Below are positions 6,222-58,418 of a stretch of 64,000 nt of DNA, piece after piece. The notes below the pieces were generated by a model. The model saw only the letters and a program-made list of their open reading frames with translations. It did not search any database and was not told the origin of the DNA. The position numbers and the translations under genes are program-made. Numbering within the stretch: the first letter of the stretch is position 1; each line of letters opens with the position of its first letter. The DNA is taken from the IMG/VR virus record IMGVR_UViG_3300043425_001539, positions 62,001 to 126,000 of that record; one strand, 5' to 3'.

Positions 6222-6236
6222 ATTTTAAAACTATTT

Positions 6237-6374
6237 TTAGTTATAAATGATAGAAATATAAAAATTATAAGCGTCTTCTTCTTTGCCATAATAATTTTTA
6301 TAATATTCACCATTTTCGGAATATTCAACCCACCAGTTTGAACCGTCAAAATCCATATTCACAAATTTTTTCAT
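6237..6374 (-). CDS. Small 45-aa aromatic/acidic protein missed by the ORF track
   Basis: ATG overlaps the TGA of 6371-7384 (ATGA coupling); MKKFVNMDFDGSNWWVEYSENGEYYKNYYGKEEDAYNFYISIIYN fills the gap. Confidence 0.55.
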   Translation of the reverse strand: MKKFVNMDFDGSNWWVEYSENGEYYKNYYGKEEDAYNFYISIIYN

Positions 6375-25133: not shown

Positions 25134-25634
25134 TTATTTTATTGCTATTATTCCCAAGATTAAACCAATTAAGGATATGCCGCTGATTGAACCGCCTACT
25201 AGCATTTTAGTTTTTAAACTATGTATTTCTTTTTGATAGATATCTTCAATTTCTTTAGACTTATCTAATTGTGATTCCAATGTTACAATTGCTTCCTCCC
25301 TGTTTATTATCATTTCTTTAAGTTCAGAAATTTGTGTATTTTTATAATCCACAGCTTCTTTTAGGATATTTATTTGAACATACTGTTCCATGATTAATTT
25401 ATCTTTTGATGATATTATCTTTAAACAAATACTATCATATTCGGCTACTTCTAAATTTAATTTTTCAAACCAAAAAAGTAGGTCAGTTAAATTATCAAGT
25501 TTTTGAGCTTGTTCAACCGTCATTATAATTACATCATTGCCCGAAGAATCTTTTTCAAAAATAGGATAATTTGTCTGACCTAACAAAGAAAAAGAAAAAG
25601 AAATACATAATATTAATAGAATACTTTTAATCAT
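25134..25634 (-). CDS. Signal peptide plus coiled coil plus C-terminal TM protein (spanin-like?)
   Basis: MIKSILLILCISFSFSLLG; heptads; C-terminal GGSISGISLIGLILGIIAIK. Confidence 0.5.
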   Translation of the reverse strand: MIKSILLILCISFSFSLLGQTNYPIFEKDSSGNDVIIMTVEQAQKLDNLTDLLFWFEKLNLEVAEYDSICLKIISSKDKLIMEQYVQINILKEAVDYKNTQISELKEMIINREEAIVTLESQLDKSKEIEDIYQKEIHSLKTKMLVGGSISGISLIGLILGIIAIK

Positions 25635-26041
25635 ATCTCCAACTTAATTTTTAAAGAGTTAAGTAAATCTTCATTTGTTCTATTATTGGGATTTCTTTTT
25701 AACTCGTCAATCTTTTTTTGGGTTTCAGCTAATTCTTTTTTAATTAAAAATAACTCTCTTTGTGATCTATACAAGTTTCTTTGTAAAATTTCAATTTCTT
25801 TATCAGAATTTTTAATTTTGTCAACAAGAGTTAATTCTTTTTTTTCCAAAACTTGATAATCATATTTTAGGCGACGAAATTCTTCATTTAGAATTTCATA
25901 TTCTTTGTATAATTCCTGTTTCTTTGCCTCAAGTGTTGCTATCTTTTCTTTATATCCACTATTACTTGTATACCACATTGATCCCAATACACCGCAACAT
26001 ATAAGTAAGATAATAATTATAATATTTCTACTGTCTTTCAT
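25631..26041 (-). CDS. N-terminal TM plus coiled-coil protein (i-spanin-like?)
   Basis: IIIIILLICCGVLGSMWY then a long Lys/Glu heptad; 4-nt overlap with the downstream gene. Confidence 0.5.
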   Translation of the reverse strand: MKDSRNIIIIILLICCGVLGSMWYTSNSGYKEKIATLEAKKQELYKEYEILNEEFRRLKYDYQVLEKKELTLVDKIKNSDKEIEILQRNLYRSQRELFLIKKELAETQKKIDELKRNPNNRTNEDLLNSLKIKLEI

Positions 26042-31774: not shown

Positions 31775-31798
31775 TTTTGATCTTTTTCTTCCTTTTTT

Positions 31799-31807
31799 CT
31801 ATATATC
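31799..31807 (-). promoter_or_regulatory. Candidate late-promoter motif GATATATAG
   Basis: Intergenic, 24 nt upstream of the ATG at 31774. Confidence 0.6.
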
Positions 31808-37800: not shown

Positions 37801-39280
37801 GCGGATGTTCTACTCTAAAAATTACAAAATAATCAGGCAAAACTTTTCTCATCCACAAAGGAGCTAAGAAAGACAAATCTTCGTCATAAAATTTACTTCC
37901 TAATTGTTCTACGCCATAATTATAAAAATTATCATATTGCTGAAATAAAGATGTTTTTGTACTTTGATAATCTTCATCAGCTTGAAATAAATCAAAAACA
38001 ACCTCTTCAGGTGTGTCTTTAAAAAATGTATATAAATCTTTTTGATATGTAGATTCAGGACTAATAGTGAATCTTTTATATCGGCTATCTGATAATTGAG
38101 AGTTTGCATCAAACGAATTTAATGAAAGTTCTCCTTTAGAATCAACTGTCAGTTTAACATTTCCTGATAATTTAGGATTTGACTTTAATAAAGCATAAGA
38201 GCTTCTATCATCATATACGGTATTGGATGTATTTTTATTATTTTGATATGTTGTTCTTGAAGTTCTTACAGTAGTTTCGGCATATCCAAATATATGGAGT
38301 TCTTGATAATCAATGTTATCAGAGAACTCAGTAGGAATCATAGAAACATTTCCAGATTTTAATCCTAAAAATTCTGAAGCAAAACTATTAGGGTTATTTG
38401 GTCCTGTTATACTTTCAGGCATTATCACAGGAAATGCTTGTGATAACGGGCCAAAACTAGGATTATACCTAAAAATAAGAATATTTAATTTAAGATGACT
38501 GTCATTATTGCCTTCATAATCTATTCTTACAGTAATACCTCTATTTTTATCAAGTTCGGGTGATGATGAAATAATTTTTGATGAGCTGAAGCCCAATAAA
38601 TCCCTGGAAACAAAGCCTGTTCCAGTAAATCCACCAACAGAACTTCCTGTTGGATTATATGCTGTGCCATCAAACGGATTTATAACTGAACTATAATCAA
38701 TAGCTGTACCTGTTGCTGGAACACTATACACTAAATTTTCAAGTTCGCCTAATGAAACTGTGTTAAATTTCCAATTTTCTTTATCAACTTCAGAATAAAA
38801 TCCTACATTAATGTTTTTACTTGACAAAGATCCAGTTGCACCAACAAATGGTTCAGAACCACCAGTTGGTCCTGTCAAAGAAACTTTTGTTACAATACCG
38901 GATAATGTATTTAGGTATTCAACTTTTTCAATTATAACAGGCCCTTCGCTATTAGGTAAAAAATCTTGAGTATTTTTAACATATAATCCAGGGCCTATAT
39001 TATTAAAACCAAGAGTATTAACAGTTGATAAATCTTGATCAATAAAACCTTGTGATGTTAGGTTGCATTGCCCTCCTATTGCAGAAGTTTGAGAAATTTC
39101 AAATGTTCCTACACTTTCAAATGTACGAGTATTTGGATAAAAAAGGACATAAAGTGTTTCATCTTGTGCAAGTACGTCATCATTTCTATTAATAGTTAAA
39201 AATGTTGACGATTTTCCTTGCATTACAACTTCACGTTCAAAATCTATGTTGTAAAAATTAGGACCGTTTATATTACTCAT
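31808..39280 (-). CDS. Giant virion structural protein
   Basis: 2490 aa uninterrupted, Asn/Ser/Tyr/Phe-rich, in the structural block. Confidence 0.65.
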   Translation of the reverse strand: MSNINGPNFYNIDFEREVVMQGKSSTFLTINRNDDVLAQDETLYVLFYPNTRTFESVGTFEISQTSAIGGQCNLTSQGFIDQDLSTVNTLGFNNIGPGLYVKNTQDFLPNSEGPVIIEKVEYLNTLSGIVTKVSLTGPTGGSEPFVGATGSLSSKNINVGFYSEVDKENWKFNTVSLGELENLVYSVPATGTAIDYSSVINPFDGTAYNPTGSSVGGFTGTGFVSRDLLGFSSSKIISSSPELDKNRGITVRIDYEGNNDSHLKLNILIFRYNPSFGPLSQAFPVIMPESITGPNNPNSFASEFLGLKSGNVSMIPTEFSDNIDYQELHIFGYAETTVRTSRTTYQNNKNTSNTVYDDRSSYALLKSNPKLSGNVKLTVDSKGELSLNSFDANSQLSDSRYKRFTISPESTYQKDLYTFFKDTPEEVVFDLFQADEDYQSTKTSLFQQYDNFYNYGVEQLGSKFYDEDLSFLAPLWMRKVLPDYFVIFRVEHPLSLVTYNEGSVDDLFKDVFKDARIIKTFDMRDTSKLGKYIRKIVNDPRFIERPIEVSFDEDASTVWNGIVYKSGTIAGKGELLNDFWTTDKPIKEFENFITNGFERNGIISTNLINLEFLFDDPEANIYSINRYFGLYVSEIQLAEFELASSVLGKIPNQSPPPKPGVDGEPYSTRSFVQSNPNGIQLPIEYYHNTSFNNNTSSIPFYQGNVIGKFPLPAMVDDPLRIFYIKDRDDVFKRAISLSEVDYGFTGTTDYKRVTQVKLFDTQEDISKYGGPIQMISQNDALLLNEGQSQLIINLIDQGNNGSIIADDECLEINVKNYNNTDKNSQYYFQVSAVGGTATSFTFFQDQSVTSLSSSFVQPNVGENVTASFDSTQDLVENETIFIVSGGFYKIVNLISSTSAEIKNLGNPENSAQGTTINANALVGSYPTGIATYAYTALSYKLDIDTNISLDLEQGYSGNSSNYALLDSYEIIIEYPKYTLSVLNGSSGLNVIIKEQFKQFRWKMFANPTGLQKGKSWAFPVQDPNGYDWISNFSNDGNVNDIAKAISNCINSFDNSPAYALAEDNKIILKSKLKPLDGNTIEFKRHMISGKSYINNLGFYENGNVKVATNISTVSYAGLTSNESIGLNIVNNPNIAGDTFYFVKILKTSSGANIIIRSDVNALNVSTIQNTGTYYSFFTTNSNFSDTTIPFSIDTSNISLGSYQNFVIKLTVDTNASQLFIGGAQRRRSRARIAKLDGERYFQNNKSEILTGISLGSNIINVSTTEGIYVGGAVSGTGIPVNSYVLQINQNTKSVTINNTATETGNFNLSFGNLSILNNELFLQQWFQTAKSQYSRLLPWNVQGKYVYSLPYLDEPIFDNKNLISAFNEKNTYSIIEINDASQEFYLSDEKRIVAYEMYRPTIGLFSMFPIKEFDFDFFLSDYSYSPILETFRYFLNESIGENEYLELSSDENYVLLPQIIDPSDPGGIKKMPSFGSYQFSFEGFNEITSTWDNLSTVSVTSVSSETGFLINTYTPFYHYDTYEHPQKYDDGSEYLIRGSGYRNFERSLVSNKNPDNSITTIDVKKFRIRYLGGAGLPYLNIQKSDYSKDNDIKEFGGFVGITDILNINDQQEITRLKDEGKYVEAFLRQQLLSEYDRLRENYNKDFATLSRVVPFINKWVQEGTDARDNYYRLNTSRAFGRTNFSPDDSVDFAEPIILSHEFPYLDTVPKDYPEESLGSSRSYMFAKLSDIAYDNKSWYDLIMTDNSNDWFLKYFSVGYPSEQDYYGNLIPKPREERFTFLTLNPGIPRPQTLFRGAKIQVIDIDDSKIDLPEIANSVKYNEYKFAAIQRTVPYNFYETQSPLEIEIIKNDKFKSILIIITKRTHDYRTQSGLQDYVFNYSALDNLKNNNQQQFNISSAIGSNISTVAPYGVTGSSYDAQAAYRPRQLFFGGGYIQEGDPKLSGVIDTSNVLPSYNSTSDYLTFFLNSSDTYYPFSVSDEVNPFINKYPISLDSSYPFIYDIASTRIVPNSFSFEGFLNKFISTGFSDSTSTYFTYDFTDTRKSSDTILINSLGISSPLRYQYFKNSITSFGNSEGLNTFTYPNNSYPFLTLETFNIGGGIGFYQNTKNLFTFANIKKNINDSSPLVKYYKVTDNGKVEAQDFKLTIIAADQIIKKGVLNYIVDQDRPPQYANVNVIGYNIVNTNQNEVVIRHRGYYEPKSMDIISFWVREDESVTNHFEKDFLLANTRISSLPTYSGVIRNYGINKVADEEILKIPVNSAYKSVYEFIHEVAVDRKNINVLNSSWDAKYFRKYIDLNNYVDIDGYNEMKEFKTFMASKAMIIPKSLDVQTFLPNEITFTVLQPAISNGLTAQINVSRPRLFIELALQERLIRFIKENISYSNFDEFNWLNTNLGLNLTESELDTLKDIYIRENLLALYEVNNIFLYSVQRDDVPVFVSNLSESEKTTNGYRVDKDCQVSQLSKFNYTVTKTLDTKKSYGYTVSVTLKRV

Positions 39281-39293
39281 TATACATTAATTT

Positions 39294-42200
39294 TTATACA
39301 TTTGAGCGGAAAAGCGATTGAACACTTTCTTTTGTAAATGATATGTTTTCGACCACTTGTGCCACTTCAGGAACTGATTGTGCATCAACAAGAGCAATGC
39401 TGTCTTTTTTGTATGTTGAAGTCACTTGAACATCAAACGAAAATACAGGTTCATCTTGCTGGTAAATGTCAATACCTATTTTCTTAGTGTATGATAAATT
39501 TCGCAATGTTCCAACCCTTTGAGGATCATATCCTCCAAGTATTCCTAAACCGCCAGCAATTACACTTGTAACTGTTGAAGATATCCAAGGTCCAAAATAA
39601 TCAGTCATTCTGTATTGAAACACAATCGGAACAACTATTGCATTATCTGACCCAGGCTGAACGCTCTTATATGATCTTGCATCAACTCCATTAACCAACA
39701 ATTGATTAAATTGTGCAGGTCCTACAAAAAGATATGCTCCTACTGTTTGTGAACCTATTAAATATCTATCGTTATCAATAAATCCAAATTTGTTAGGCAA
39801 TTCATCAACAGATGATGGTGTGTAGGTTGATGGGAAAGGCGCTGATCCTGTTATATTAAGATTATTATCTTTGTAGCTAAGCTGTAAAGGCAAATATGAT
39901 GATAATCTTGCTGGTGCAGGTTCGTTAAAATAATTTGAATGTATAAACTCTGAAACAATCTCAGGCGCCTGCGGTAAACCAGTATTTGTGTTTAGATTAA
40001 CAGTAGGTAATTGGAGATTACTCATTGCTACTGTTGTGCCAACATTGTTAATAGCAGGATGCTGAATATGTACACAAAAATTTGTTAAATACCCATTTCC
40101 TGCTGCAGTATTTCCAGGAGTTACAGGAGAAACAACGTCCCACACCCACGGAGCGGTTGTTCCAAAAATACCCGATGCGGTTGTTCCAGGAATAGCAGTA
40201 ATTCCCGTGTCACCAAGATCGGGAATGAAACTTCTTGTTGCTGTTTGTCCATAAATAGGATTAGTTAAACCTACATCGGTATATCTACTATATAAAAATT
40301 GACCTAATAATTGTCCACTTTGATAAAATGAAGCAGATAATGTATTATCATTATTTGTATCTGTTGTATTTATACCTAAATTAACAATAGGAACATAATC
40401 ATATTTTCTATAATTATTATAATCTTGATCATTTACAGTAAATGATCCTCCTGTTGCTCCTGTTCCGCTGTAAGGAACCATTTGCCCAAATCCTCCTGGG
40501 AATCTTGATATTAATTTAAGAGGAGAAGCACTATCATTTTGCAGATATAAATAATATGTTTTAGTTAATATTGCGCCTCTTTGCTGCGCTGTTGGCAAAG
40601 AAGCAACTTGGTCTGCATAATATCCTGCAAATAAATTAACAGTAGAACCGTTTTGTACAGGTAATTTAGTATTGCTTTGATCATCAACCAAAAATATAGA
40701 TATTGGAGTAACCACTTCGTTTAAGCGATTTTCAAGATCTTGTATACGCAACTGCATTTCCTGTAACTTTTGATACAAAGATATAACGTTGCCGTCGGGT
40801 GTATAAAAATTTGAAGCAATTACATCCGCACTGTGAGCAAAATATTGTTCATTTGCTGTAAAAGAGGATGATAGGTGTTGATCCAAACCTTGTGCAGCTA
40901 AATCAGATTCAATGTCAACTTTTACCTTTTCTTGTGCCGCCTGCTGTAATGCAATTGTAGCTTCGTCTTCGGTAACCAAATCATTAGGAAATTCAAACGA
41001 TATTGTATTTGACGGCGAAGACAGAATTGGATTATTTGGCCATCCTGCCTCAGACACAGACACTACATAAAATTCAACTTTTTCTCCTTTAGATATAGGA
41101 ATATCTATTTGATTAATATTGATAACATCAGGATTAGTTATATCCTCATTTGCCCAAACGTATTTTCCTGTATTGCCATCATATATTTTTTTACGAACCG
41201 GTGATTTATACTCGTTTAAAGCTGAAAATGATGCTCTTTGTTTTGATCCATTAGGATCGGTATAATCGAATTGCTTAATATCAGTTGCACTGCCGTCAGG
41301 CCTAACATATCTATAATAAGTTATAAATTGAATTACATTCTGCGCACCTGTTTTTTGACTGATAACAGGATTTGGTATTTGAAAAAATCCACGTAATCTA
41401 TATTTAGGCGTATCTAATGCAGCTGGTGCATTTTGTGCAGCAGAATTTAGATCAGCAACAATGGACGCATATAAAGATGATTGTGAAGTTTTTTGCTTAA
41501 TTGCTCTGTCTAACTTATTTATATCAGACTTTCTTTCATTCTCATTTGCATATTTTTTGGAATTAATTTTAGATTTTAGAAAATCAATCGATTTTTCCAA
41601 TTCATTAATTGTTTGCTGAACTTGTATTTTATCAGATTGTTTTTTTCTGATTGCTTCAATTTCTGCTTGATCTAACTTATGATCATTTATTTGAACAACT
41701 TGAAAATTATTAATGTCAAGCACAGGAGCATTTGGAACTAATCCATCAAACGTAGAAATTGATCCATCTCTTGCGCTTGTTAATAAATAATTACCAAAAT
41801 CTAAAACAGAAGACTGATAAAAATCTTTGAGATTTGTGGTTCCAGTTGTTAATGAAATGTTTAAATCATTTGTAAAAAATCCAATGCCTGGTGACCAAGT
41901 TGTTGATAATAAATTTGCTTCATCGTTAATTGTTCTAAAAAATACAACAGTGTACTCATTATATCCTATCCCAACATTAATTAATTTAGGCGAAAATGTT
42001 TCTGAATAAAATTGAACATTTTCGCCAATAACTATCGGTTCGTATCCGCTTATTCTTGTCACTCTCACGTATCTTGTTGAGCTATCAATTTCAGCTATTT
42101 CATAAATAGTTTCGCCTTTAATTAATTTATCGCCGACCTTTAAAGTCATAGAATCTACAGATAATGATAAATTATCAGTATAAGTTAATTTATCAAACAG

Positions 42201-42911
42201 ATAAAATCTTTTTGTTGAAGTGGTGCCATCGGAATTAGTGTATGTTCTATCTTCATAATTAACAGGCAAAAAAGATCCTGTATAACGAACAACTGATAAC
42301 GGCAAATCATTTACGCCTTCATCTAAAAAATATGTTATACCTTGTTTTTGTAAGTCAACCAATAAGTTAACATAATTTATATTATTTTTTCCTTGGATGT
42401 TATTTTGAAAATACTCAAGTTGTGTTTGATTGCTAATGTTTAGAATCATCCTTTTCACAAACACCTTGGATTCTTCTTGCGGAATATAACGTGTTACATC
42501 AAAACTTACTTTTAACGCAGGACTCATCAGGTTTTCAAAAAACCAATTATTCTCTGAAATAAAAGTTGATGGAACAGCAACTTCTCCGATTGGAGAAGGA
42601 TTAACAGGAGTTTTTGCTTGATAGATTTTTTTATAAGTGCCATCAGGTTGTCTTATAAAAGCATCACTGCCGTCAAACCCCAACATTTTTGATATCGTGT
42701 TGTCAATCCTGTCTATGCTGGATTTAAGATATCCAAAAGAAGGTATTGAGTACGTTGATGTTGTTCCGTCATTTTCTTTGACCGAAATTTGAACTGTTTC
42801 AGAAACAGAAACAGTTGCTTGTTGCAACTGTTGCAATGTTTCTAATGAATTATTTTGCAGTCTAACAAAATCAGCAAGAACTGAGGATAAACTATTATTT
42901 GTGTCAGCCAT
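39294..42911 (-). CDS. Large virion structural protein with coiled-coil segments
   Basis: 1205 aa; heptads at IQVQQTINELEKSIDFLKSKI and LYQKLQEMQLRIQDLENRL. Confidence 0.6.
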   Translation of the reverse strand: MADTNNSLSSVLADFVRLQNNSLETLQQLQQATVSVSETVQISVKENDGTTSTYSIPSFGYLKSSIDRIDNTISKMLGFDGSDAFIRQPDGTYKKIYQAKTPVNPSPIGEVAVPSTFISENNWFFENLMSPALKVSFDVTRYIPQEESKVFVKRMILNISNQTQLEYFQNNIQGKNNINYVNLLVDLQKQGITYFLDEGVNDLPLSVVRYTGSFLPVNYEDRTYTNSDGTTSTKRFYLFDKLTYTDNLSLSVDSMTLKVGDKLIKGETIYEIAEIDSSTRYVRVTRISGYEPIVIGENVQFYSETFSPKLINVGIGYNEYTVVFFRTINDEANLLSTTWSPGIGFFTNDLNISLTTGTTNLKDFYQSSVLDFGNYLLTSARDGSISTFDGLVPNAPVLDINNFQVVQINDHKLDQAEIEAIRKKQSDKIQVQQTINELEKSIDFLKSKINSKKYANENERKSDINKLDRAIKQKTSQSSLYASIVADLNSAAQNAPAALDTPKYRLRGFFQIPNPVISQKTGAQNVIQFITYYRYVRPDGSATDIKQFDYTDPNGSKQRASFSALNEYKSPVRKKIYDGNTGKYVWANEDITNPDVININQIDIPISKGEKVEFYVVSVSEAGWPNNPILSSPSNTISFEFPNDLVTEDEATIALQQAAQEKVKVDIESDLAAQGLDQHLSSSFTANEQYFAHSADVIASNFYTPDGNVISLYQKLQEMQLRIQDLENRLNEVVTPISIFLVDDQSNTKLPVQNGSTVNLFAGYYADQVASLPTAQQRGAILTKTYYLYLQNDSASPLKLISRFPGGFGQMVPYSGTGATGGSFTVNDQDYNNYRKYDYVPIVNLGINTTDTNNDNTLSASFYQSGQLLGQFLYSRYTDVGLTNPIYGQTATRSFIPDLGDTGITAIPGTTASGIFGTTAPWVWDVVSPVTPGNTAAGNGYLTNFCVHIQHPAINNVGTTVAMSNLQLPTVNLNTNTGLPQAPEIVSEFIHSNYFNEPAPARLSSYLPLQLSYKDNNLNITGSAPFPSTYTPSSVDELPNKFGFIDNDRYLIGSQTVGAYLFVGPAQFNQLLVNGVDARSYKSVQPGSDNAIVVPIVFQYRMTDYFGPWISSTVTSVIAGGLGILGGYDPQRVGTLRNLSYTKKIGIDIYQQDEPVFSFDVQVTSTYKKDSIALVDAQSVPEVAQVVENISFTKESVQSLFRSNV

Positions 42912-45100: not shown

Positions 45101-45958
45101 TTAATATGCAACATACGGAGTGCTATTAAGTACTCTCCAACCGTTTCCTACTTGAGTATCAGCATAAAGAGTTATTGCCGCTTTTCTCAATTCATAGCTA
45201 TCACTATCAACAAAAGTTGCAGTAATTCCACTCATTAAAATGTCTTGATTGTATCCTGATGCAAGATTAACACTGCTAATACCAAATTGTGCACCAGTTG
45301 TTCCTGTTGCTGCAGGCTGATCTATAATAACCGTTATAATTTGTCCAGGAGTTACGTTTGCTGAAGATACGGCGGGCAATTGTATTTTAGTGCAACTTGT
45401 TGCCGCTAACGCAGGATCATACGTTGAATAATTTAAACGAATAACACTAATCTTAGGAAAATTTGAACCTGCTGTAATTTCTCTTACGGAAGAAGACGGA
45501 GTTTGTGCAAGGGTTTGTGGGTTTAGCAAATAAGCATTAGAAGCGCTTTGACCATCCAATTGCGGTGAAGAAAGAGCTGCATCAAGGTCAAATGGCAATT
45601 CACTCACAAAACTACTTCCATTAGTTGCAGTATCATCAAACACAACATTTCCACTAACCAATAAATCTAATCCAACATTTAATGCTTCAGTTATTGAAGT
45701 AGTTTTGGAAACGTTTAAATTTCCTTGAAATAAAGCTGATGCCTCACATGTAAAAATTTGTGAAGTGACTGGATTGGTATATCTTTTGATTAAAGCATTT
45801 CCTACATTTAAAGATCCGCCAGGTGTAAATGATGTATCTAAACGGGTCTCTATGTTATTAATAGCTGTTGCTAATGTAGAAAAATTTGAATTGATTGTAA
45901 TTCTTGAGCCTGCTATATTATCGCTGCCTAGAATTTCTGTAATTGATACGGTTGCCAT
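45101..45958 (-). CDS. Virion structural protein with gp9/gp10-like N-terminal motif
   Basis: MATVSITEILGSDNIAGSRITINSNFSTL resembles the N-terminus of ORF 26054-31774. Confidence 0.55.
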   Translation of the reverse strand: MATVSITEILGSDNIAGSRITINSNFSTLATAINNIETRLDTSFTPGGSLNVGNALIKRYTNPVTSQIFTCEASALFQGNLNVSKTTSITEALNVGLDLLVSGNVVFDDTATNGSSFVSELPFDLDAALSSPQLDGQSASNAYLLNPQTLAQTPSSSVREITAGSNFPKISVIRLNYSTYDPALAATSCTKIQLPAVSSANVTPGQIITVIIDQPAATGTTGAQFGISSVNLASGYNQDILMSGITATFVDSDSYELRKAAITLYADTQVGNGWRVLNSTPYVAY

Positions 45959-45962
45959 ATTT

Positions 45963-46014
45963 AATGTATTTTTTCTGCCTTTTTTCTATATATCAAAGGC
46001 AGAAAAAATACATT
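45963..46014. repeat. Perfect 20-bp inverted repeat with a 12-nt loop
   Basis: aatgtattttttctgccttt (45963-45982) and aaaggcagaaaaaatacatt (45995-46014) are exact reverse complements. Confidence 0.95.
45986..45994 (-). promoter_or_regulatory. Candidate late-promoter motif GATATATAG in the hairpin loop
   Basis: 27 nt upstream of the ATG at 45958. Confidence 0.65.
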
Positions 46015-46019
46015 GTGTT

Positions 46020-46859
46020 TTAACTATTTTTAATATAATTGGCTGGTAAATACTTTTCCCATTGCGGATCATACCAAAATCTTCTACCTGTTTTATCAAC
46101 AATTGATGCGCCTTTATTGTAGCATAGCATCCATTCTTTGAAAGTTTTTCCTTCAGTACCGTTTGGGTTAACCCAATCTTTAAGTTCACCTCCTCCTAAT
46201 TTGTAAGCATCTCTACAGCACAAATGAATGAATTTAATTAATGAATCCACTTCCAGTTGTGTCAACTTATTTGCTGGTTGAAAAGGATTAATATTCATTC
46301 TATAAAGAATTTCAGCTCTTAAATAATTGCCAACGCCATTAAATAGTGATTGATTCATAAGAATCTCGTTAAGCGGAGTATTAAAAACTTTTTGTTTATA
46401 CCAATTATGTCTTAAGTATTCCGAAAATTCATTAAATTCTGTAAGCGGGCAATAACCTCTATTTTTCGCCCACCCGTCAACCCATTTCCATTTAGCAAAT
46501 CTTCTAACGTCGTGCAAAAATAAATAATTTCCTTCTATTGTTTTGAATCTCAAATGAGCATGCTTCATAATTTTATCAAAATGCTCTGAGTTCTTTTTAA
46601 TATAAGCAAAATTCCCACTCATACCTAAAGTAACTGATAAACTCTTTTTAGGTAAACCATCACCTAACGGTATTAAATCAATAATCATTTCCTTGCCTCG
46701 AGTTTTTGCTTGCATTTTAAACACAACATCATCAAAACTGTCTAACGGAGTTTTAACTTTTGAAACTTCTGACTTTTCAACTTTATTAAAAAATGTTTCT
46801 TTGGATGAAACATAATTAATAAAATCTCCCATGATTTTAACTTCAGCTATTTCAGGCAT
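46020..46859 (-). CDS. nei: Fpg/Nei family DNA glycosylase (NEIL1-like, no four-Cys zinc finger)
   Basis: N-terminal MPE, RGKEM, LGMSG, DVRRFAKW, H2TH LMNQSLFNGVGNYLRAEILY, C-terminal GRRFWY. Confidence 0.88.
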   Translation of the reverse strand: MPEIAEVKIMGDFINYVSSKETFFNKVEKSEVSKVKTPLDSFDDVVFKMQAKTRGKEMIIDLIPLGDGLPKKSLSVTLGMSGNFAYIKKNSEHFDKIMKHAHLRFKTIEGNYLFLHDVRRFAKWKWVDGWAKNRGYCPLTEFNEFSEYLRHNWYKQKVFNTPLNEILMNQSLFNGVGNYLRAEILYRMNINPFQPANKLTQLEVDSLIKFIHLCCRDAYKLGGGELKDWVNPNGTEGKTFKEWMLCYNKGASIVDKTGRRFWYDPQWEKYLPANYIKNS

Positions 46860-46865
46860 AATATT

Positions 46866-47549
46866 TTAAATAGATTTGTTTGAATTTTTATATACAGCCT
46901 CACACATTTTAATCATAGCCGTTACATCTTTTTCGCAATATGTAATAATACGGTCAATTTCTCCATTCCAATACGTTGTATGAACCATTGAGCCGTCAAT
47001 GTCGTCTTTGGGTGATGGAATACCCATTTCATATACTGCTTCTTCAAATGAAACATCTAAACTTGAAAATGCCTTCCACCAATCTTTCATATCAAAAATT
47101 GAAATTTCCCAAGGTTTTTTATCAAAAGTATTTAAACATTCAGGAACATTATACCCATAAGACATAAGTTTACGATAAATCCATGCAATATCAAAATTTT
47201 TAATATTCCATCCAGTAGGCGTCATACCGTTTGCGCTTGCTTTTACAAAGAGCGCGTATACCGATTTTATTAGTTCAGCTTCGTTTTCATTTGAAATAGT
47301 ATTAACTTTAATTTCACCTTCTTTCCAAACACCAAAAGATAAACATGCAATTTTTCCAAATTCAGGAAATAATGAAACTTTATCTAAGTATGCTTGGTTA
47401 ACATCACCTAAGCTAAGGCGTTCAGCTTTTTTCTTGAAAATAGCTGCGCCAACTGGGTCTTTACTTTTAAATTCTTCATAGTTGCGGTATTCTCCGCAGG
47501 TTTCAATGTCAAAAAATAAAAAGCGGGAAAATTTTTCTTTAGAAAACAT
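46866..47549 (-). CDS. Stand-alone PolB-type DEDD 3'-5' exonuclease
   Basis: FFDIET, GWNIKNFDIAW and YCEKDV Exo I-III motifs; KPWE motif. Confidence 0.85.
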   Translation of the reverse strand: MFSKEKFSRFLFFDIETCGEYRNYEEFKSKDPVGAAIFKKKAERLSLGDVNQAYLDKVSLFPEFGKIACLSFGVWKEGEIKVNTISNENEAELIKSVYALFVKASANGMTPTGWNIKNFDIAWIYRKLMSYGYNVPECLNTFDKKPWEISIFDMKDWWKAFSSLDVSFEEAVYEMGIPSPKDDIDGSMVHTTYWNGEIDRIITYCEKDVTAMIKMCEAVYKNSNKSI

Positions 47550-47564
47550 AATTTTTTTATGGTT

Positions 47565-47593
47565 TATATACCAAGTCTAATTAATAGTTTCAA
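47565..47593 (-). promoter_or_regulatory. Possible sigma70-like promoter TTGAAA-N17-TATATA with TGn extension
   Basis: Read directly in the divergent intergenic region upstream of 47549; could be chance in AT-rich DNA. Confidence 0.3.
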
Positions 47594-47624
47594 GAACTTT
47601 TTTTAAAAGTGTTATATAATTTAT

Positions 47625-49047: not shown

Positions 49048-49602
49048 CTAAACTTTAACCGTTTTAACTGTCACCCCTTTTTCTTTTTCGACTTCTTTTG
49101 CTAATTTTAAGTTATCATCATTATCATCAAAAAATATAAAATTTTTATACCCAGTTTCAACTAAACGATGCAATGCTTCTTTTTTTCTTTCGGCGATGCT
49201 ACCTTTAAAGCCATGTTTAGGATCGTTAACAGCAATTACTAAATCCTGATGTATATCTATGCCATTATGTAAGAAAAATTCGCGTATCATTGCAGAATTT
49301 GATCTTGCAGTCACAATTGCAACGTGAGTGCCTGATTTATAAAAATTCTTTAATTCGTCAAGAATGTGTGAAATGAATGTAGATTGTTTTAAAATATCAA
49401 AATCTTCAAATTCAGAAAAAGATAACGTGTGATTTTTATTGGGTTTAAAAAAATTAAATTCAGTAGGAGATAAAGTTTTTATTATCTTATGTGTTTTTGA
49501 ATCTAGTACATGTATTTTTGCTGTTGATAAAATTAACGTCTCGTCCAAGTCGAATACGGCAAGTGTGCTGGATATTTTTCCTTTTATATTTACTTCATTC
49601 AT
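49048..49602 (-). CDS. HAD-superfamily phosphatase (phage type)
   Basis: VFDLDETL (DxD), IVTARS, K in ERKK, FFDDNDDN. Confidence 0.85.
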   Translation of the reverse strand: MNEVNIKGKISSTLAVFDLDETLILSTAKIHVLDSKTHKIIKTLSPTEFNFFKPNKNHTLSFSEFEDFDILKQSTFISHILDELKNFYKSGTHVAIVTARSNSAMIREFFLHNGIDIHQDLVIAVNDPKHGFKGSIAERKKEALHRLVETGYKNFIFFDDNDDNLKLAKEVEKEKGVTVKTVKV

Positions 49603-50210
49603 TTTTGTTTCATTAAAGTATTTTTTCGTATTTCTCTACTTCTTTTTCTTTTTTCTTCTAAAAAAAATTCTTTTGTATAAGTTTCTTTGTTTTTGTATAA
49701 TATCCAATTTTTGTGCCGATTGCGTCTTCCGTTAATAACCGCATTTATATGACATGAAAGTGAACCTATTTTATTTGCAAGATCAAACTTAGTTCCTACA
49801 TATTCTTCAAAAGTTTCTATATTAAAAAAATGATAAATTGTTTTATCATACCTTGGATTTTTTTCACCTTTTCTTGCGGTGGGATTTTCTTTTAAAAATT
49901 TTTTTAATGTTTCTGACTTTTTTTTATTTGCATATTCACCAAGATTTCCGCCCTGTCCACCGTCTACTAAATTATAACCTATATCAGGATTTGTTGAATT
50001 AAGTTCTTTTATCCAAAATTTTTCTTTGCTATTAAGCTCTTCTTTTGAAGAACAAGATTCTAAAATATCTTTTTTAAAATTTTCTGAACCATATTTTTTA
50101 ATAGCCCTGCGTAATTTGAAACCCGAACCTAAATATTTAGGATTGTTAAATTTATCTTGTCCAACATAAATTTTTCCATTAATAAGATTTGTGATTTTGT
50201 ATATGACCAT
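49599..50210 (-). mobile_element. Free-standing GIY-YIG homing endonuclease (Seg-like)
   Basis: VIYKITNLINGKIYVGQ, YLGSG, EKFWIKELNS, GYNLVDGG, then a basic DNA-binding region. Confidence 0.9.
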
Positions 50211-50222
50211 AAAAGTTTTTTA

Positions 50223-50231
50223 ATATATATC
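50223..50231 (-). promoter_or_regulatory. Candidate late-promoter motif GATATATAT
   Basis: 12 nt upstream of the endonuclease ATG. Confidence 0.5.
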
Positions 50232-50266
50232 ATTAAAAAAAACTTATTAATGTATCATCTAAGATA

Positions 50267-50312: not shown

Positions 50313-51665
50313 TTATTCTATTTTGATATATGTTTCAGGTGTCCATTCAGAATAAATTTTATCATTAAGATTAAAAATGCTACATACCGACCAAAAATAT
50401 TCTCCATCAGATAATGTACCCGAAGGTATAACATATATATCTTCATTTGAATACATTTTAATTTCCGTGTATGCTATTTTTCTGTAATTATTGCCACCTG
50501 ACAAAACATTAACGCCTGAGTGAACAATAATATTTTTATCTATAATAGAATCTGCAAATGAAGAAGAAAATGTAAAATCTGCGCCGTTAAATTGCGCTAA
50601 TGTTATTTCCCAATTTCTATTTCCTAAATCAGTTTTTGATTTAATAAAAAGATCCTTTGATATATTTTCAACATAAGAGGAAATTTCAGGCACAAATGTA
50701 TGATTTTTAGCCTGTATTCTTAAAATTCCTGATGTATAATCAGCATAATAAATTCGATACAAATCTTTTTGCAATGATCCATCATTTCCAAGCAAGCAAG
50801 ATACGTTTGCGCCTGTTCCAGTGCCTACAACATTTACAAGTGGATTAACTGAATAGCTGCTCCCTGCATTTTCAATTTTTACCGTGGTAATTTTTCTTTC
50901 ATATGCGCCTGTGGTACCTATAAAAGGTTTTAAAAGAATATCATTATTTCCATTTGCTCTTGTCCCAGTTACGTCAAAATAATTAATATTACCGCCGTCA
51001 GAAACATTTTTTTCTCTAACTCTTAAATTATACTTAAATACATTATTTGTAGGATCTTCCCATCTAAAATATATTCCATCGTTTCTTATGGTTGATAATA
51101 AATTAATAGGATACTCTTTAATTTTTTCATTTGTTATGTCTGTATAAATTTTTCTTTTCCAAACAAAATTATCATTTATTTCCATTAATAAAGGATCCCC
51201 GTCATTAATATTACATAATAAATTATATTCATATGTATATATGTCGGCAAAAGGACCGCTGACTGCCACATCCAATATATCTATGACGGCACCTTTTATA
51301 TAGCTATGATTATCATTTATTGAAGTTACAGTAAAAAAATCTCCTTTTTTAATTAAATTTGACCCATACAATCCTGGAGTGTTTGCGGTGGGCGCTTCTT
51401 TTACTGTGTATTCAACTACAATTTCATATACAAAACCTACATTAGTTTGAGTTCTTCTTGAATTAAATGAAAGAATCGGAGAAGAATATTCAGTATCATA
51501 ATAATCATTATCTATACTTTCAGAAGTATAGATATACCCTTGATTTAATGCATTAGAAGGCGTATTACCATCTTCTATTGGAGGTACCGATATAAATCTG
51601 TTCAAATCATTTGTTGATAAAAAAACAGATTTTTCTTTAATTTGTCTGCGATCCAAAGTTTTCAT
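50313..51665 (-). CDS. Virion structural protein
   Basis: 450 aa, beta-rich; the ENAGSSYSVNPLVNVVGTGTGA motif is shared with the adjacent baseplate protein. Confidence 0.55.
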   Translation of the reverse strand: MKTLDRRQIKEKSVFLSTNDLNRFISVPPIEDGNTPSNALNQGYIYTSESIDNDYYDTEYSSPILSFNSRRTQTNVGFVYEIVVEYTVKEAPTANTPGLYGSNLIKKGDFFTVTSINDNHSYIKGAVIDILDVAVSGPFADIYTYEYNLLCNINDGDPLLMEINDNFVWKRKIYTDITNEKIKEYPINLLSTIRNDGIYFRWEDPTNNVFKYNLRVREKNVSDGGNINYFDVTGTRANGNNDILLKPFIGTTGAYERKITTVKIENAGSSYSVNPLVNVVGTGTGANVSCLLGNDGSLQKDLYRIYYADYTSGILRIQAKNHTFVPEISSYVENISKDLFIKSKTDLGNRNWEITLAQFNGADFTFSSSFADSIIDKNIIVHSGVNVLSGGNNYRKIAYTEIKMYSNEDIYVIPSGTLSDGEYFWSVCSIFNLNDKIYSEWTPETYIKIE

Positions 51666-54600
51666 CTATTTCAATAAAAGTATTCTTTTTAATTGTTGCA
51701 GAATTTCCGTTTGTGTCCTCTATTAAAAGTTCAACTCCAAATATTCCTGGGTAAGTAAATGTCCACATTATTTTCGAATCAGATGTTTCTACTAAAGTTT
51801 CTTCATTTTCTTTAATCTTCCATAAATATTTAGATTTACCTGATATTTTAGAAGTATCTGATGTAAATAATATAGAAACACCTATTGGAAATTTTCCATT
51901 TTTATTGTTGGCCCAAGTTTCCTCCCATGTTAATGCTCCGCCGATTGATCTTTCATAAGGTAATCTTTGTGAATCAGATTCAGCCAGGCTAGAATTACTA
52001 AAATAAGGCGATGATATGTATGAATATGTAGAAGGTAAATCACTTGCTGGGTACCAACCTTTATATCCAAAAGGACTTAATCCTTCAAATAAATATGTTT
52101 GAATGTTTCTGTAATTTATAACAAAATCATTTAACCCAGTCAAAAAACTTCCTACTTTATTTTCACCAAATCCCAGCCAAGAATAATAATTGCCAACAGG
52201 AAACGAGTGGGATAGCGAAGAAATATTACCATCGGGTGCTTCAAATGTTAACCCACCTTCACCTGTAAGATACCCTAAACAGTCTACGCTTGGTGTTTTT
52301 GCCTGCGCAATTATTTTAAAGTTGGCAGCAATATCACCGGATAAAACCTGTGTTGAAATAACTCCAGTATTCCATTCAGCATAAAAGGATAAAGAATTTC
52401 CACTTCCGGTGAAAGGAGAAGATAAAGTTATTTCACGAATAACACCTTGCTGTACAAAAATATTTGTAACTGTTGCAGGCGCTGTTGGGTACAATGGCAA
52501 GTAGTCTGATGTCAGAATATCACCAGGAGCTATCTGATTTTCTAATAGACCTGCAACATTTTTAATTTTATAGTCACCTACTATACAGTCACCTATAAAA
52601 GTAGCTTTCTTTTTGATATCTTTATCTAATGTTACAGTAGTTCCTGTAATTCCCAATACGGTTGAAACTTTTTCAAAAGGTTCGCCATATATTACATCTC
52701 CCACATTAATAGCTGAAGAAGTAAAAAATGAATTGGGATCAGAATAAGTGTTAATGTTTATAAAGATTGGAGATACATATTGTTCTGATATTGGATAATA
52801 ATAAAATTTGTTTAATCCTTGAGATGTTAAGTTATTTAATTCATAAAGAGCTTGAGCATAAATTTGCGCCGTACTCATTCCTCCTACAATTCCAGTAAAA
52901 TTATAAGTATCGTCTTCATTAAAAGTTAATCCACTATTTTGTACCAAATCATTAATGATAAAATTACACCAATATGAATTTGAAAAGTCTAATGTATTCC
53001 AAGATAATGCACAAGATTCTTGCCAAATTACATCTTTGTAATTTTGCCATGTAATAATATTAGAACCTAATTTTCTTTCAGCGCTATCTTCATCAAAATT
53101 TCTTTGACACACCTGAAATGAAGAAGAAATTTTAAGTAAATCATTTTCTTGATCAGATACAGATAAAATTGTGCCTACACCATTTTTCCAATTACCTATT
53201 TGTGTAACTTGCAAAGAAAAATCTCCGTACAAAATTCCGTTATCAAAGTACCAATTTGTATGATTAGCTATTGCGGTAGAATCAAATTCAGATGAAGGCG
53301 CATTATTAAAATCTCCTGACGAAGGATACATATTAAAATCAAAATAAATATTTGCAGCACCTCCTACATTTTCTCCATAGTAAATTCTTGTAGGAAATTC
53401 TTGATATTCGTATTCTAAATAAACATTTTCAATTCCTTCTGCTGCTAAATTAATTAAATAAGAATTTAATTCATCAATAGGTCCACCGTTTATTCCTGCA
53501 ATATCTATTACATATATTTCAGATTCAGACCAAATATCATAAATGGATCCAACATTACTTGTGTCCAAGTAAACGTGCGTTGTTCTAAAATCTTGCGTGT
53601 ATTTTAGTTCATTATCTAAATATGCATACAGTTTAATTTGCGTAAATCCTGGCCGTATTTCATCAAGAGGATTACATGTGACGGCGGATTTTTTAATATA
53701 AATTTTACCTAAATGATCACGCTTTTCAGGGATATTTGAATTTACTGATTCAATTACCCAAGCAGAAGATGAAATTATAGGATTCCAATTCAAATCACCA
53801 TTCAAAGGTTCACCGTCTCTAACTTTATAGATTTTTCCAATTTCTCCTTTTTTAAGTAAAGATAAATCATTGCCTTCTCCATTAAGTATTATATTTGAAG
53901 GTTGTCCGCTATACGTATTTTTTCCATTAATAGGTATACGTTTTCTTATTGGCGAATTGTTTCTTTGTACCGCTTTTATAAACTTTCCTACACTTATGCC
54001 TGATGGATTAGTATCTTCATTGTAAATTTTATTTCCGTTTAAGGTAATAGTTCCACCTATTTCACGCAAAACTTCCCATGTTGCAGGAGAAGCCTTAAAA
54101 GCTTCAGGCGGTTCAGAAAAAAGCTCAATATATGTATATTCAGGATTTGAATAATCCGAACCTAATACATTAAGTTGATACACAGTTTCATCTCTTCTTA
54201 TAAATATCCATTCGTCATCAGGATTATATAACGGGTCTATCGGCGGATAAAGTCTTTGCCCTTGAACAATAATTGTAGGATTAACCGCTGGCGGATTTGT
54301 GGTAGAATCTTGATACCCAATAACAGGTCCTTCTAAATTATCTTCAGGCGATATTTCAACAATCGGAAATTCTTCACAATAAGGAAAGCTATAATTATTA
54401 ATATCAGAAATATCTGAAATATCAAGATTATCCCATCTAAAATCAAAAGATTCCCAAATAGAATTATTAAATATGGGATTTATCCATCTACCGGTAGAAT
54501 TATCCCAATTAAAATCTATGTATCTATTATTTTCAATTTCTTGCTGCGTTTGATTTTGCTGTGTATTAGGTAATTGCTTTAATGAATCCCATGTATTAAC

Positions 54601-58101: not shown

Positions 58102-58418
58102 TAAGATATGTATTTGTATTTTTTATCTACTGCATAATTAATCGATTTTCTGATTTGCTGAATTGTATCAACTATATAAGTTAAAAGTTTATTATATTGA
58201 GTCACTACCGCATCAACATCTTCATTTGCAAGAATATAATTAGACAAAGATTTTTTCATAAGATTAGGTCTCCAGTCATACCCTACATTTTTTAAATCAT
58301 CTTGACGATGGATCATTGCTTCATAAAAGCTTTGTCTTGTTAAATACGCACCCATTTTTATTTCTTCATTGGGATCTTCGTAAGTTTTTTCAATTATATT
58401 TACTTCTCTATTAGCCAT
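58101..58418 (-). CDS. Small baseplate-associated protein
   Basis: 105 aa, translationally coupled between gp6-like and gp7-like genes. Confidence 0.55.
   Translation of the reverse strand: MANREVNIIEKTYEDPNEEIKMGAYLTRQSFYEAMIHRQDDLKNVGYDWRPNLMKKSLSNYILANEDVDAVVTQYNKLLTYIVDTIQQIRKSINYAVDKKYKYIS

What the first reader, a model, noticed from the sequence alone, without database searches (positions are those of the whole stretch)
45963..46014. Perfect 20-bp hairpin with the late-promoter motif in its loop, gating the giant structural operon
Seen: exact inverted repeat whose 12-nt loop holds GATATATAG; the 3' arm covers about -5 to -24 of the ATG at 45958, at the junction of repair genes and the structural block. 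Known: in T4 genes e, soc, 49 and I-TevI, early read-through RNA folds to hide the initiation region while late transcripts starting within the hairpin are translated. Inference: the same temporal switch, here in an SD-less context and unusually long. Alternatives are a terminator or a DNA cruciform promoter.
Basis: partly seen in the sequence, partly recalled or inferred. Interest (0 to 1): 0.7.

Follow-up and report, generated by a model that had tools for sequence, protein, structure and literature searches.

The report
Late-promoter hairpin gating a tail-fibre gene
A perfect 20-bp hairpin in a freshwater jumbo phage encloses a phage late-promoter motif and covers the leader of a tail-fibre-like gene, most likely a copy of the phage T4 trick that lets only late transcripts be translated, here in a host that uses no Shine-Dalgarno sequences; no transcript data exist.

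Summary
Arms 45963-45982 and 45995-46014 pair perfectly over 20 bp. The 12-nt loop reads GATATATAGAAA on the coding (-) strand, and the 3' arm covers -24 to -5 of the ATG at 45958. This is the longest perfect hairpin in the 238-kb genome; window shuffles reach 14 bp at most.

GATATATA behaves like a T4-type late promoter:
- It is strongly biased to the coding strand and sits just upstream of start codons.
- It is invariant at this gene junction in 12 related sequences.
- It heads the capsid operon.
- The phage encodes a gp55-like late sigma factor.

Read-through RNA folds at -28.8 kcal/mol. RNA starting just after the motif is unstructured.

The same design, with the promoter inside a hairpin that occludes the start region, recurs at a few other genes. 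These include both GIY-YIG homing endonucleases found in six related records and a third homing endonuclease, the gene class T4 controls this way.

Limits:
- There is no TSS or translation evidence.
- The 20-bp form is lineage-specific and shows no covariation.
- Only about 8% of motif-bearing genes are gated.
- The hairpin can directly gate only the first gene, not the whole giant operon.

Verdict: a probable new member of a known mechanism, of moderate interest.

The parts
45995..46014 (-). 5' arm of the hairpin (AATGTATTTTTTCTGCCTTT on the coding strand). It would be present only on transcripts that start upstream, i.e. read-through from the exonuclease-Fpg unit.
45983..45994 (-). 12-nt loop GATATATAGAAA. 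The candidate late-promoter element GATATATAG lies at 45986-45994.
45963..45982 (-). 3' arm (AAAGGCAGAAAAAATACATT), the A-rich leader of the downstream gene, covering -24 to -5. By analogy with -10-type promoters the inferred transcription start is at about 45979-45981. This start is not mapped.
   Evidence: TSS position is inference
45101..45958 (-). Gated gene, 285 aa, MATVSITEILG.... The start codon at 45956-45958 is conserved in all orthologues. It is a tail-fibre or tailspike-adaptor-like protein on weak evidence.
46020..46859 (-). Upstream gene, an Fpg/Nei-type DNA glycosylase. Its stop codon lies 5 nt before the 5' arm.
46866..47549 (-). 3'-5' exonuclease, the first gene of the upstream transcription unit. 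It has its own TATATAA-type promoter region at 47550-47624.
31775..31807 (-). Second copy of the same promoter-plus-leader module (GATATATAGAAAAAAGGAAGAAAAA), ahead of the 1906-aa gene. It has no complementary 5' arm, which shows that the leader is older than the hairpin.
50213..50245 (-). Sister example: a 9-bp hairpin (AAGTTTTTT / AAAAAACTT) with GATATATA in its 15-nt loop. It ends 2 nt before the ATG of a GIY-YIG homing endonuclease gene (49599-50210).

Best explanation
The hairpin is a cis-acting mRNA switch of the T4 type. It ties translation of the 285-aa tail-fibre-like gene to the promoter from which the mRNA was made.

1. Transcripts that begin upstream, in the exonuclease-Fpg unit, run through the 61-nt spacer without a terminator.
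2. They contain both arms and fold into a 20-bp stem of -28.8 kcal/mol. The stem buries the A-rich leader (-24 to -5) that an SD-less, Bacteroidota-type ribosome needs single-stranded, so the gene is poorly translated.
3. Once the phage's gp55-like late sigma is made, host RNA polymerase starts at the GATATATAG element in the loop, about 5-8 nt downstream of it.
4. These transcripts begin inside the 3' arm, lack the 5' arm, have an open leader and are translated.

Shown: the hairpin, the motif family and its conservation, the late sigma gene, the folding difference between long and short forms, and the recurrence of the design at homing endonuclease genes.

Inferred: that the motif is a late promoter, where transcription starts, that upstream transcripts read through, and that the stem blocks initiation.
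For: (1) Anatomy. A perfect 20-bp stem fills the spacer, with the motif in the loop and the 3' arm at -24..-5. The long form folds at -28.8 kcal/mol, z = -6.95. Forms starting at 45981 or 45986 fold at -3.9 kcal/mol, no different from shuffles. The unpaired probability of the start region falls from 0.65 to 0.28, below all 100 shuffles of the upstream part.

(2) The motif behaves as a promoter.
- GATATATA occurs 32 times on the coding strand and 2 times on the other.
- 21 of the 32 lie 12-60 nt upstream of a called ATG, a zone that is 5.8% of the genome (p = 8e-19).
- The consensus is G-A-TATATA-a/g with no -35-like element.
- In relative G001 (40% GC) the counts are 20 versus 2, often directly after strong intrinsic terminators.
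- GATATATA is invariant at this junction in 12 related sequences.
- It heads the operon holding the gp23-like major capsid gene.

(3) Machinery. The phage encodes a gp55-like late sigma (phrog_234, E 1.6e-13) and a second ECF-like sigma behind a host-type promoter. Relatives are placed in T4-related jumbo subgroup 2.2 (PMC7824862).

(4) Recurrence. Start-region occlusion at the <=0.01 level by sequence 5' of the motif is seen in 5 of 64 motif-bearing genes against 8 of 509 controls over six genomes (Fisher p = 0.009). The gated genes include:
- both phrog_314 GIY-YIG homing endonucleases found in the six records: window 50210 (9-bp stem; weaker, 0.09 in the occlusion test) and G001 72572 (19-bp stem containing motif and ATG);
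- a phrog_3339 homing endonuclease (G000 39149, 13-15-bp stem containing the ATG).

(5) Precedent. T4 genes e, soc, 49, I-TevI, I-TevII/III, segB and Aeh1 mobE use exactly this arrangement (PMC3014915 section 29; PMC2988022 section 12).

(6) In Flavobacterium johnsoniae, initiation is tuned by mRNA structure and upstream A residues, not by SD (PMC6847099).

(7) The paralogous promoter at 31775-31807 sits inside the presumed late operon, where read-through is itself late. It has no 5' arm, as the model predicts.
Against: - No RNA evidence at all. No RNA run could be listed for the gene, and the one RNA run holding the phage had no contig at the hairpin.
- The stem ends at -5 and leaves the AUG free. 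PMC2988022 notes for Aeromonas phage 25 seg43 that a hairpin just upstream of the RBS is of unproven effect.
- The 20-bp helix is confined to the window's lineage. Across 12 orthologous junctions only 43% of cells pair, no better than shuffles or slid controls, and there is no compensatory change.
- Three orthologous junctions (L011, L012, L016) have no hairpin at all.
- Four further relatives show no enrichment of occluding stems (0 of 24), so gating is the exception.
- All 20 pairs are Watson-Crick with no G-U. This fits a recent DNA-templated origin as well as selection on RNA.
- The temporal class of the upstream exonuclease-Fpg promoter is unknown, and it also carries a TATATAA element.
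- The Fpg stop codon is 5 nt from the stem, so terminating ribosomes would partly open it.
Confidence: 0.5

Rival explanations
1. The hairpin marks an RNA 3' end or a processing site. It would end, protect or separate the upstream exonuclease-Fpg message. It could do so as a stable 3' stem against exonucleases, as a non-canonical pause or terminator, or as a substrate for host RNase III (a 20-bp perfect duplex is about two helical turns). The promoter would sit in the loop only because the spacer is short.
For: The stem begins 5 nt after the Fpg stop codon and fills the spacer. It is long enough for RNase III (established knowledge). In relatives the same junction or other late promoters are preceded by separate hairpins or terminators (G001 sites 174343, 36806 and 25645; L006/L007 carry a small stem right after the stop codon). 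A boundary between the two units therefore seems to be wanted.
Against: There is no U-tract after the stem on either strand. The T-run is in the 5' arm and the A-run in the 3' arm, and the loop is 12 nt. The terminator scan does not call it. The phage's clear terminators have 3-5-nt loops with A-runs before and T-runs after. The phage has no RNase III gene, and the host enzyme is untested. This model does not explain why sister hairpins contain the start codon of the downstream gene.
Confidence: 0.17
2. The hairpin is a translational coupling device. On polycistronic RNA the stem keeps the 285-aa start closed unless a ribosome finishing Fpg, 5 nt upstream, melts the lower stem. Expression from read-through RNA would then be tied to Fpg translation rather than shut off.
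For: [quoted passage not shown] A terminating ribosome covers roughly a dozen downstream nucleotides (established knowledge). Those nucleotides are the partners of -5..-14.
Against: The upper 10 bp, including the GC core, would stay closed over -15..-24. The sister hairpins are not all next to stop codons. This model does not explain why the promoter sits in the loop.
Confidence: 0.1
3. The palindrome is a by-product with no function. It would be a recent templated (quasi-palindrome or strand-switch) mutation that perfected an older imperfect inverted repeat, tolerated but not selected.
For: All 20 pairs are Watson-Crick with no G-U. The L006-like clade carries an imperfect 10-bp version with a bulge, TTTTTCT(T)GCC / GGCAGAAAAA. 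The perfect form is seen only in near-identical strains. No covariation was found.
Against: The perfect form persists in several independent metagenomes. A 20-bp stem over a late gene's leader would be costly if it served no purpose. Several orthologous junctions have independently different stems that occlude the leader or the start codon (L006/L007 outer TTGCCA/TGGCAA, L008-10 ATGATATAT/ATATATCAT). The design recurs at homing endonuclease genes.
Confidence: 0.13
4. The element acts at the DNA level. The inverted repeat would extrude as a cruciform, presenting the promoter element single-stranded in the loop (a pre-melted or N4-like hairpin promoter), or it would bind a dimeric regulator.
For: Either DNA strand can form the hairpin at about -19 kcal/mol. 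The perfect symmetry of the arms fits a DNA-level role.
Against: Most copies of the promoter motif have no flanking inverted repeat. Where stems exist, loop size (12-34 nt) and motif position vary, and in some cases the motif is in the stem, unlike the fixed geometry of N4 promoters. A 12-nt loop disfavours extrusion. The arm sequence is unique in the genome, so no shared operator exists.
Confidence: 0.07

Closest known systems
Phage T4 late-promoter-within-hairpin translational control (genes e, soc, 49, I-TevI, I-TevII/III, segB; mobE of phage Aeh1)
   Same: A late promoter made of a single A/T-rich -10-type element lies inside the DNA that encodes an RNA hairpin. Upstream-initiated transcripts fold and hide the initiation region, while late transcripts lack the 5' arm. 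A gp55-like late sigma is present. The design is used on homing endonuclease genes and on structural late genes (PMC3014915, PMC2988022).
   Different: The promoter consensus is GATATATA(G/A), not TATAAATA. There is no Shine-Dalgarno sequence to hide. The stem covers an A-rich leader (-24..-5) and leaves the AUG free. The stem is perfect and, by my recollection, longer than the T4 examples. The host is probably a Bacteroidota bacterium. Nothing has been tested experimentally.
seg43(25) hairpin of Aeromonas phage 25
   Same: A very stable hairpin lies immediately upstream of the initiation region without including it (PMC2988022 section 12).
   Different: That case has an SD-type RBS just below the stem, and its regulatory effect is also unproven.
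Rho-independent (intrinsic) terminators, including the phage's own
   Same: It is a stable stem-loop at the end of a gene.
   Different: The loop is 12 nt, there is no downstream U-tract and the A/T runs have the reverse polarity. The phage's clear terminators have 3-5-nt loops and T-runs.
RNase III processing hairpins of phage polycistronic mRNAs (for example T7)
   Same: It is an intercistronic stem about two helical turns long.
   Different: The stem is perfect and has no internal loop. The phage has no RNase III gene, and cleavage is untested.

Membership tests
T4-type promoter-in-hairpin translational gate | A stable RNA structure on upstream-initiated transcripts sequesters the translation initiation region (SD and/or AUG). 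| tested here: inconclusive
   The predicted stem is -28.8 kcal/mol, z = -6.95, and covers -24..-5. Unpaired probability of the start region drops from 0.65 to 0.28. However, the AUG is outside the stem, there is no SD in this system, and no structure probing or toeprint exists.
T4-type promoter-in-hairpin translational gate | A late promoter is positioned so that late transcripts lack the 5' strand of the structure. | tested here: inconclusive
   GATATATAG lies in the loop. The motif's strand bias, position, conservation and association with the capsid operon support a promoter. The transcription start is inferred, not mapped.
T4-type promoter-in-hairpin translational gate | The gene lies on a longer transcript from an upstream, earlier promoter, with no terminator in between. 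| tested here: inconclusive
   No terminator-like site lies between 46020 and 47549 on the - strand, and the spacer is filled by the hairpin. The temporal class of the upstream promoter (47550-47624) is unknown, and read-through has not been observed.
T4-type promoter-in-hairpin translational gate | A phage late sigma (gp55 type) directs host RNA polymerase to a -10-only late promoter. | tested here: met
   A 114-aa ORF at G000 27473-27817 matches phrog_234 'late sigma transcription factor', E 1.6e-13. The motif logo has no -35 element.
T4-type promoter-in-hairpin translational gate | Long and short transcripts are translated differently. | not testable with these tools
   This needs reporters or ribosome profiling. 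No RNA run could be listed for the gene, and the only RNA run holding the phage has no contig at the hairpin.
Intrinsic terminator | A G+C-rich stem, a short loop (3-8 nt) and a run of U directly after the stem. | tested here: not met
   The loop is 12 nt. The stem is followed by AAAUAUG on the - strand and GUGUUUUA on the + strand. The terminator scan does not list it.
N4-type DNA hairpin promoter | A short stem (5-7 bp) and a 3-nt loop of fixed geometry, required at every promoter of the class, recognised by a virion RNA polymerase. | tested here: not met
   Most motif copies have no inverted repeat, and loop size and motif position vary where one exists.
Known RNA families (Rfam 15) | A score at or above a family's gathering threshold. 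| tested here: not met
   Only generic hairpin matches to miRNA precursor models were found, at 17-24 bits against thresholds of 50-144.

The most novel reading that the evidence does not exclude
Promoter-in-hairpin gating would be an ancient, transferable module of the T4 supergroup, kept in phages of SD-less Bacteroidota. There it works by hiding an A-rich, S1/Kozak-like leader rather than an SD or AUG. The perfect 20-bp version would in addition make read-through RNA a substrate for host RNase III, so that early read-through copies are both silenced and destroyed. Less likely, the loop promoter is activated by cruciform extrusion that presents the -10-like element already melted to the gp55-like sigma.
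Probability: 0.15. Interest if true: 0.65.

Novelty: new member of a known kind. Interest (0 to 1): 0.42.

Why it matters
If confirmed, a classic T4 post-transcriptional timing device would extend to a distant clade of uncultured freshwater jumbo phages (relatives of PAU, PTm1 and the Lak phages), whose hosts start translation without Shine-Dalgarno pairing. That would give a natural, compact test case for how leader structure alone controls initiation in Bacteroidota. It also gives a working late-promoter consensus (GATATATA[G/A]) and a candidate late sigma for this clade, which helps to annotate temporal classes in metagenomic jumbo phage genomes. The parallel use on homing endonuclease genes suggests that selection repeatedly restricts these genes to late expression. 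The practical value is modest until a host or reporter system is available.

Tried and rejected
- RNA evidence. Sequencing-run searches and read laying found only DNA runs, plus one RNA run with no coverage at the hairpin. No TSS information was obtained.
- Intermediates. Exact-pattern scans of the viral and metagenome collections for the promoter-leader core returned only the window lineage and the L006-like clade. No stepwise intermediates of the arms turned up.
- Covariation. Alignment of 12 orthologous junctions and pair counting gave none; the helix is lineage-specific.
- Orthologues of other gated genes. Searches in five related records for G000 39149 and 57055 found nothing.
- A general rule. 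The idea that all promoters of this class are hairpin-enclosed was tested and rejected: 3 of 22, 2 of 18 and 0 of 24 genes at the 1% level.
- Terminator reading: rejected on loop size and the missing U-tract.
- Known RNA family: rejected.
- Phage-encoded RNase III: absent.
- Megablast against GenBank phages: no near relative.
- Divergent-promoter origin of the palindrome, as in G001 165.6 kb: rejected, because the + strand here carries no motif copy.
- Fold of the 285-aa protein: only the C-terminal half is confident, and fold matches to tailspike N-terminal parts have low TM. 'Structural' remains a lead.

Full report
WHAT IS THERE

The window is bases 62001-126000 of a 238,475-bp IMG/VR phage record. 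It has about 31% G+C, and nearly all genes are on the - strand. Its large proteins are distantly related (26-33% identity) to proteins of Sphingomonas phage PAU, Tenacibaculum phages PTm1, PTm5 and pT24, Chryseobacterium and Flavobacterium jumbo phages, and the Lak megaphages. Iyer et al. place PTm1 and Lak in the T4-related jumbo subgroup 2.2 (PMC7824862).

The reported inverted repeat is exact. Arms 45963-45982 and 45995-46014 are 20 nt each and 100% complementary, with 12 nt between them. On the coding strand the spacer reads TAA-aacac-[AATGTATTTTTTCTGCCTTT]-GATATATAGAAA-[AAAGGCAGAAAAAATACATT]-aaat-ATG.

It is the longest perfect hairpin in the genome. Sixty dinucleotide shuffles of the window gave at most 14 bp. 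As RNA it folds at -28.8 kcal/mol with z = -6.95.

The same sequence occurs in an independent viral contig. Contigs from two other metagenomes span it without differences, so it is not an assembly artefact.

SURROUNDINGS

- Upstream lie a 3'-5' exonuclease (46866-47549) and an Fpg/Nei glycosylase (46020-46859). They form a unit that starts at a divergent intergenic region, 47550-47624.
- No terminator-like site lies between that unit and the hairpin.
- Downstream is a 285-aa gene. Its orthologues all start at the same ATGGCA.
- Then come genes of 717, 1205 and 2490 aa, separated by 13-19 nt. A 1906-aa gene follows, with its own promoter copy.
- Language-model features and weak fold matches to the N-terminal, gp10-like part of the CBA120 tailspike TSP4 suggest that the 285-aa protein is a tail-fibre or tailspike adaptor.
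- A gp6-like baseplate wedge gene lies at 58411-60111.
- The picture of a repair island next to tail genes is thus reasonable, but the giant ORFs themselves have no assigned family.

THE LOOP MOTIF IS A REAL PROMOTER-LIKE ELEMENT

- GATATATA occurs 32 times on the coding strand and twice on the other.
- Of the 32, 21 lie 12-60 nt upstream of a called ATG, a zone that makes up 5.8% of the genome (p = 8e-19).
- The logo is G-A-TATATA-(a/g), with nothing conserved at -35. This is the architecture of the T4 late promoter TATAAATA (PMC3014915).
- In relative G001 (202 kb, 40% G+C, 57% Fpg identity) GATATATA occurs 20 times on the coding strand against 2, and 18 of those 20 read GATATATAG. Several copies sit right after strong terminators.
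- At the orthologous Fpg-to-fibre junction GATATATA is invariant in 12 related sequences, while its flanks diverge.
- The motif heads the operon that contains the gp23-like major capsid gene.
- The phage encodes a gp55-like 'late sigma' (phrog_234, E 1.6e-13). It also encodes an ECF-like sigma whose own gene has a different, host-type promoter.
- That second promoter class is a repeat of about 45 nt, TTG-N19-TATATTTG-TATATAA, with at least 12 copies. To my knowledge it fits the Flavobacterium sigma-A consensus.
- Only 2 of 285 genes have a GGAG-like element, and leaders are about 60% A. This fits a Bacteroidota host, where initiation is tuned by mRNA structure and upstream A residues rather than by SD pairing (PMC6847099).

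LONG VERSUS SHORT RNA

If transcription starts 5-8 nt after the TATATA, as at -10-type promoters (an inference), the start falls at about 45979-45981. That is inside the first bases of the 3' arm.

- Such RNAs fold at only -3.9 kcal/mol, no different from shuffles.
- In the read-through form the mean unpaired probability of -20..+12 falls from 0.65 to 0.28. This is lower than with any of 100 shuffles of the sequence 5' of the presumed start.

IS THE DESIGN RECURRENT?

I applied the same test to every gene with the motif 12-60 nt upstream, and to control genes. The table counts genes at or below the 1% level.

| Genome(s) | Motif-bearing genes | Control genes | Calls |
|---|---|---|---|
| This genome (G000) | 3 of 22 | 4 of 262 | 37, 38 |
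| G001 | 2 of 18 | 3 of 110 | 51 |
| Four further relatives (G002-G005) | 0 of 24 | 1 of 137 | 76 |
| Pooled | 5 of 64 | 8 of 509 | 99 (Fisher p = 0.009) |

Gating is therefore the exception, but the positive cases are striking.

- G000 39149: a 13-15-bp stem with the motif in the loop and the ATG inside the 3' arm.
- G000 177851: a stem holding the ATG.
- G000 57055: GTGTTCATGAC / GTCATGAACAC around GAATATATAA, at -22.5 kcal/mol.
- Window 50210: a 9-bp stem ending 2 nt before the ATG. It scores only 0.09 in the occlusion test, so it is a weaker case and is not among the five.
- G001 72572: a 19-bp stem at -28.4 kcal/mol, with the motif in the 5' arm and the ATG in the 3' arm.

Three of these genes are homing endonucleases: 39149 (phrog_3339), window 50210 and G001 72572 (both GIY-YIG, phrog_314). 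The two phrog_314 genes are the only ones found in the six records. A further weak phrog_3339 match (G000 40420-41559) also has an occluding stem around a TATATATA element (2% level).

Homing endonuclease genes are the very class that T4 and Aeh1 regulate by a late promoter inside an RBS-sequestering hairpin: I-TevI, I-TevII, I-TevIII, segB and mobE (PMC2988022 section 12). T4 also regulates e, soc and 49 this way (PMC3014915 section 29).

EVOLUTION OF THIS HAIRPIN

The 3' arm is older than the hairpin.

- The 26-nt module GATATATAGAAAAAAGG(C/A)AGAAAAA also precedes the 1906-aa gene at 31775-31807, without any complementary 5' arm.
- The same module is shared with the L006-like clade at both genes.
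- In that clade (80% Fpg identity) the junction has a shorter inner stem with a bulge, TTTTTCT(T)GCC / GGCAGAAAAA. It also has an outer TTGCCA/TGGCAA pairing that covers the start codon.
- In L008-L010 a different 9-bp stem, ATGATATAT/ATATATCAT, pairs the motif itself with -13..-5.
- L011, L012 and L016 have no stem.
- Formal pair counting on the 12-sequence alignment shows 43% of cells paired, equal to shuffled and slid controls, with no compensatory change.
- Pattern scans found no intermediates.

The 20-bp version is thus a lineage-specific elaboration. It may have been produced in one step by a templated (quasi-palindrome) mutation, since all 20 pairs are Watson-Crick. Its persistence in several samples argues that it is at least tolerated. 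Selection on the full length is not shown.

RIVALS

- Canonical terminator: excluded on form (12-nt loop, no U-tract, A/T runs in the reverse polarity). The phage's clear terminators look quite different.
- A role as 3'-end protector or RNase III target of the upstream message: cannot be excluded, and could coexist with gating. The phage has no RNase III of its own.
- Translational coupling: the Fpg stop codon is 5 nt from the stem, so a terminating ribosome would open the lower stem. This is a real alternative for the read-through RNA.
- A DNA-level cruciform or hairpin promoter: unlikely. Most promoters of the class have no repeat, and the geometry varies where one exists.
- No Rfam family matches.

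A leader hairpin can directly silence only the first gene. The following giant genes have their own start regions, and one has its own promoter, so the hairpin does not gate the whole operon unless translation is tightly coupled. That was not examined. 'Late' for the motif and 'early' for the upstream unit are inferences.

VERDICT

It is the most economical reading, and recurrence at homing endonuclease genes and a gp55-like sigma now back it. No transcript or translation data support it yet. It is best filed as a probable new member of the T4-type promoter-in-hairpin control, in a new phage clade and an SD-less setting. Interest is moderate.

Noticed in passing
window 49599-50245 (-): A GIY-YIG (SegE-like, phrog_314) homing endonuclease gene sits between a 450-aa gene and the PNK/PhoH genes. 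It has its own promoter-in-hairpin: 9-bp arms at 50237-50245 and 50213-50221, with GATATATA in the loop.
   Followed up: yes
G000 193,000-230,000 (outside the window); related form at window ~21458: At least 12 copies of a ~45-nt conserved promoter, TTGCCAGGTCGCGAAAAGTTTGTATATTTGTATATAA..., i.e. TTG-N19-TAnnTTTG. This fits a Flavobacterium-type host sigma-A promoter and is probably the early class. It also precedes the ECF-like sigma gene.
   Followed up: partly
G000 27473-27817 (-) and 5640-6251 (-), outside the window: Two phage sigma factors: a 114-aa gp55-like late sigma (phrog_234) and a 203-aa ECF-like sigma (Sigma70_r2 + r4_2).
   Followed up: partly
window 31775-31807 (-): A near-identical 26-nt promoter-plus-leader module (GATATATAGAAAAAAGGAAGAAAAA) starts directly after the stop codon of the 2490-aa gene. 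The same module stands at both orthologous genes in relative G004. The conserved A-rich leader with a GG(C/A)AG core may have a function of its own.
   Followed up: partly
G000 41463-41512 (outside the window): A 16-bp perfect hairpin with an 18-nt loop lies inside the coding sequence (codons ~16-32) of a homing-endonuclease-like gene. The + strand loop reads TTGATATAATC. It is unexplained.
   Followed up: no
window 13249-14988 (-): A 579-aa ORF carries an intein/Hint splicing domain (PF14890, PF01079). The host protein was not identified.
   Followed up: no
window 26054-42911 and 51637-58101 (-): Giant ORFs of 1906, 2490, 1205 and 2154 aa match no Pfam family and only PHROGs of unknown function. 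A gp6-like baseplate wedge gene lies at 58411-60111, and there is a weak Rz-like spanin hit at 25631-26041.
   Followed up: partly
G001 (locus L043) about 165,610-165,690: Two divergent GATATATAGAAAAAA promoters face away from each other and so form a 15-bp inverted repeat. This is a different way for the motif to end up in a palindrome.
   Followed up: partly
window 45984/45985: One short contig in a wastewater metagenome (X7) matches only the core of the hairpin and has an extra G in the loop, downstream of the motif. It probably comes from a more distant relative.
   Followed up: no
G000 177555-177851 (outside the window): A 98-aa hydrophobic protein is among the strongly gated genes, with its start codon inside the 3' arm. 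A membrane or lysis role would echo the gating of T4 gene e, but this is speculation.
   Followed up: no
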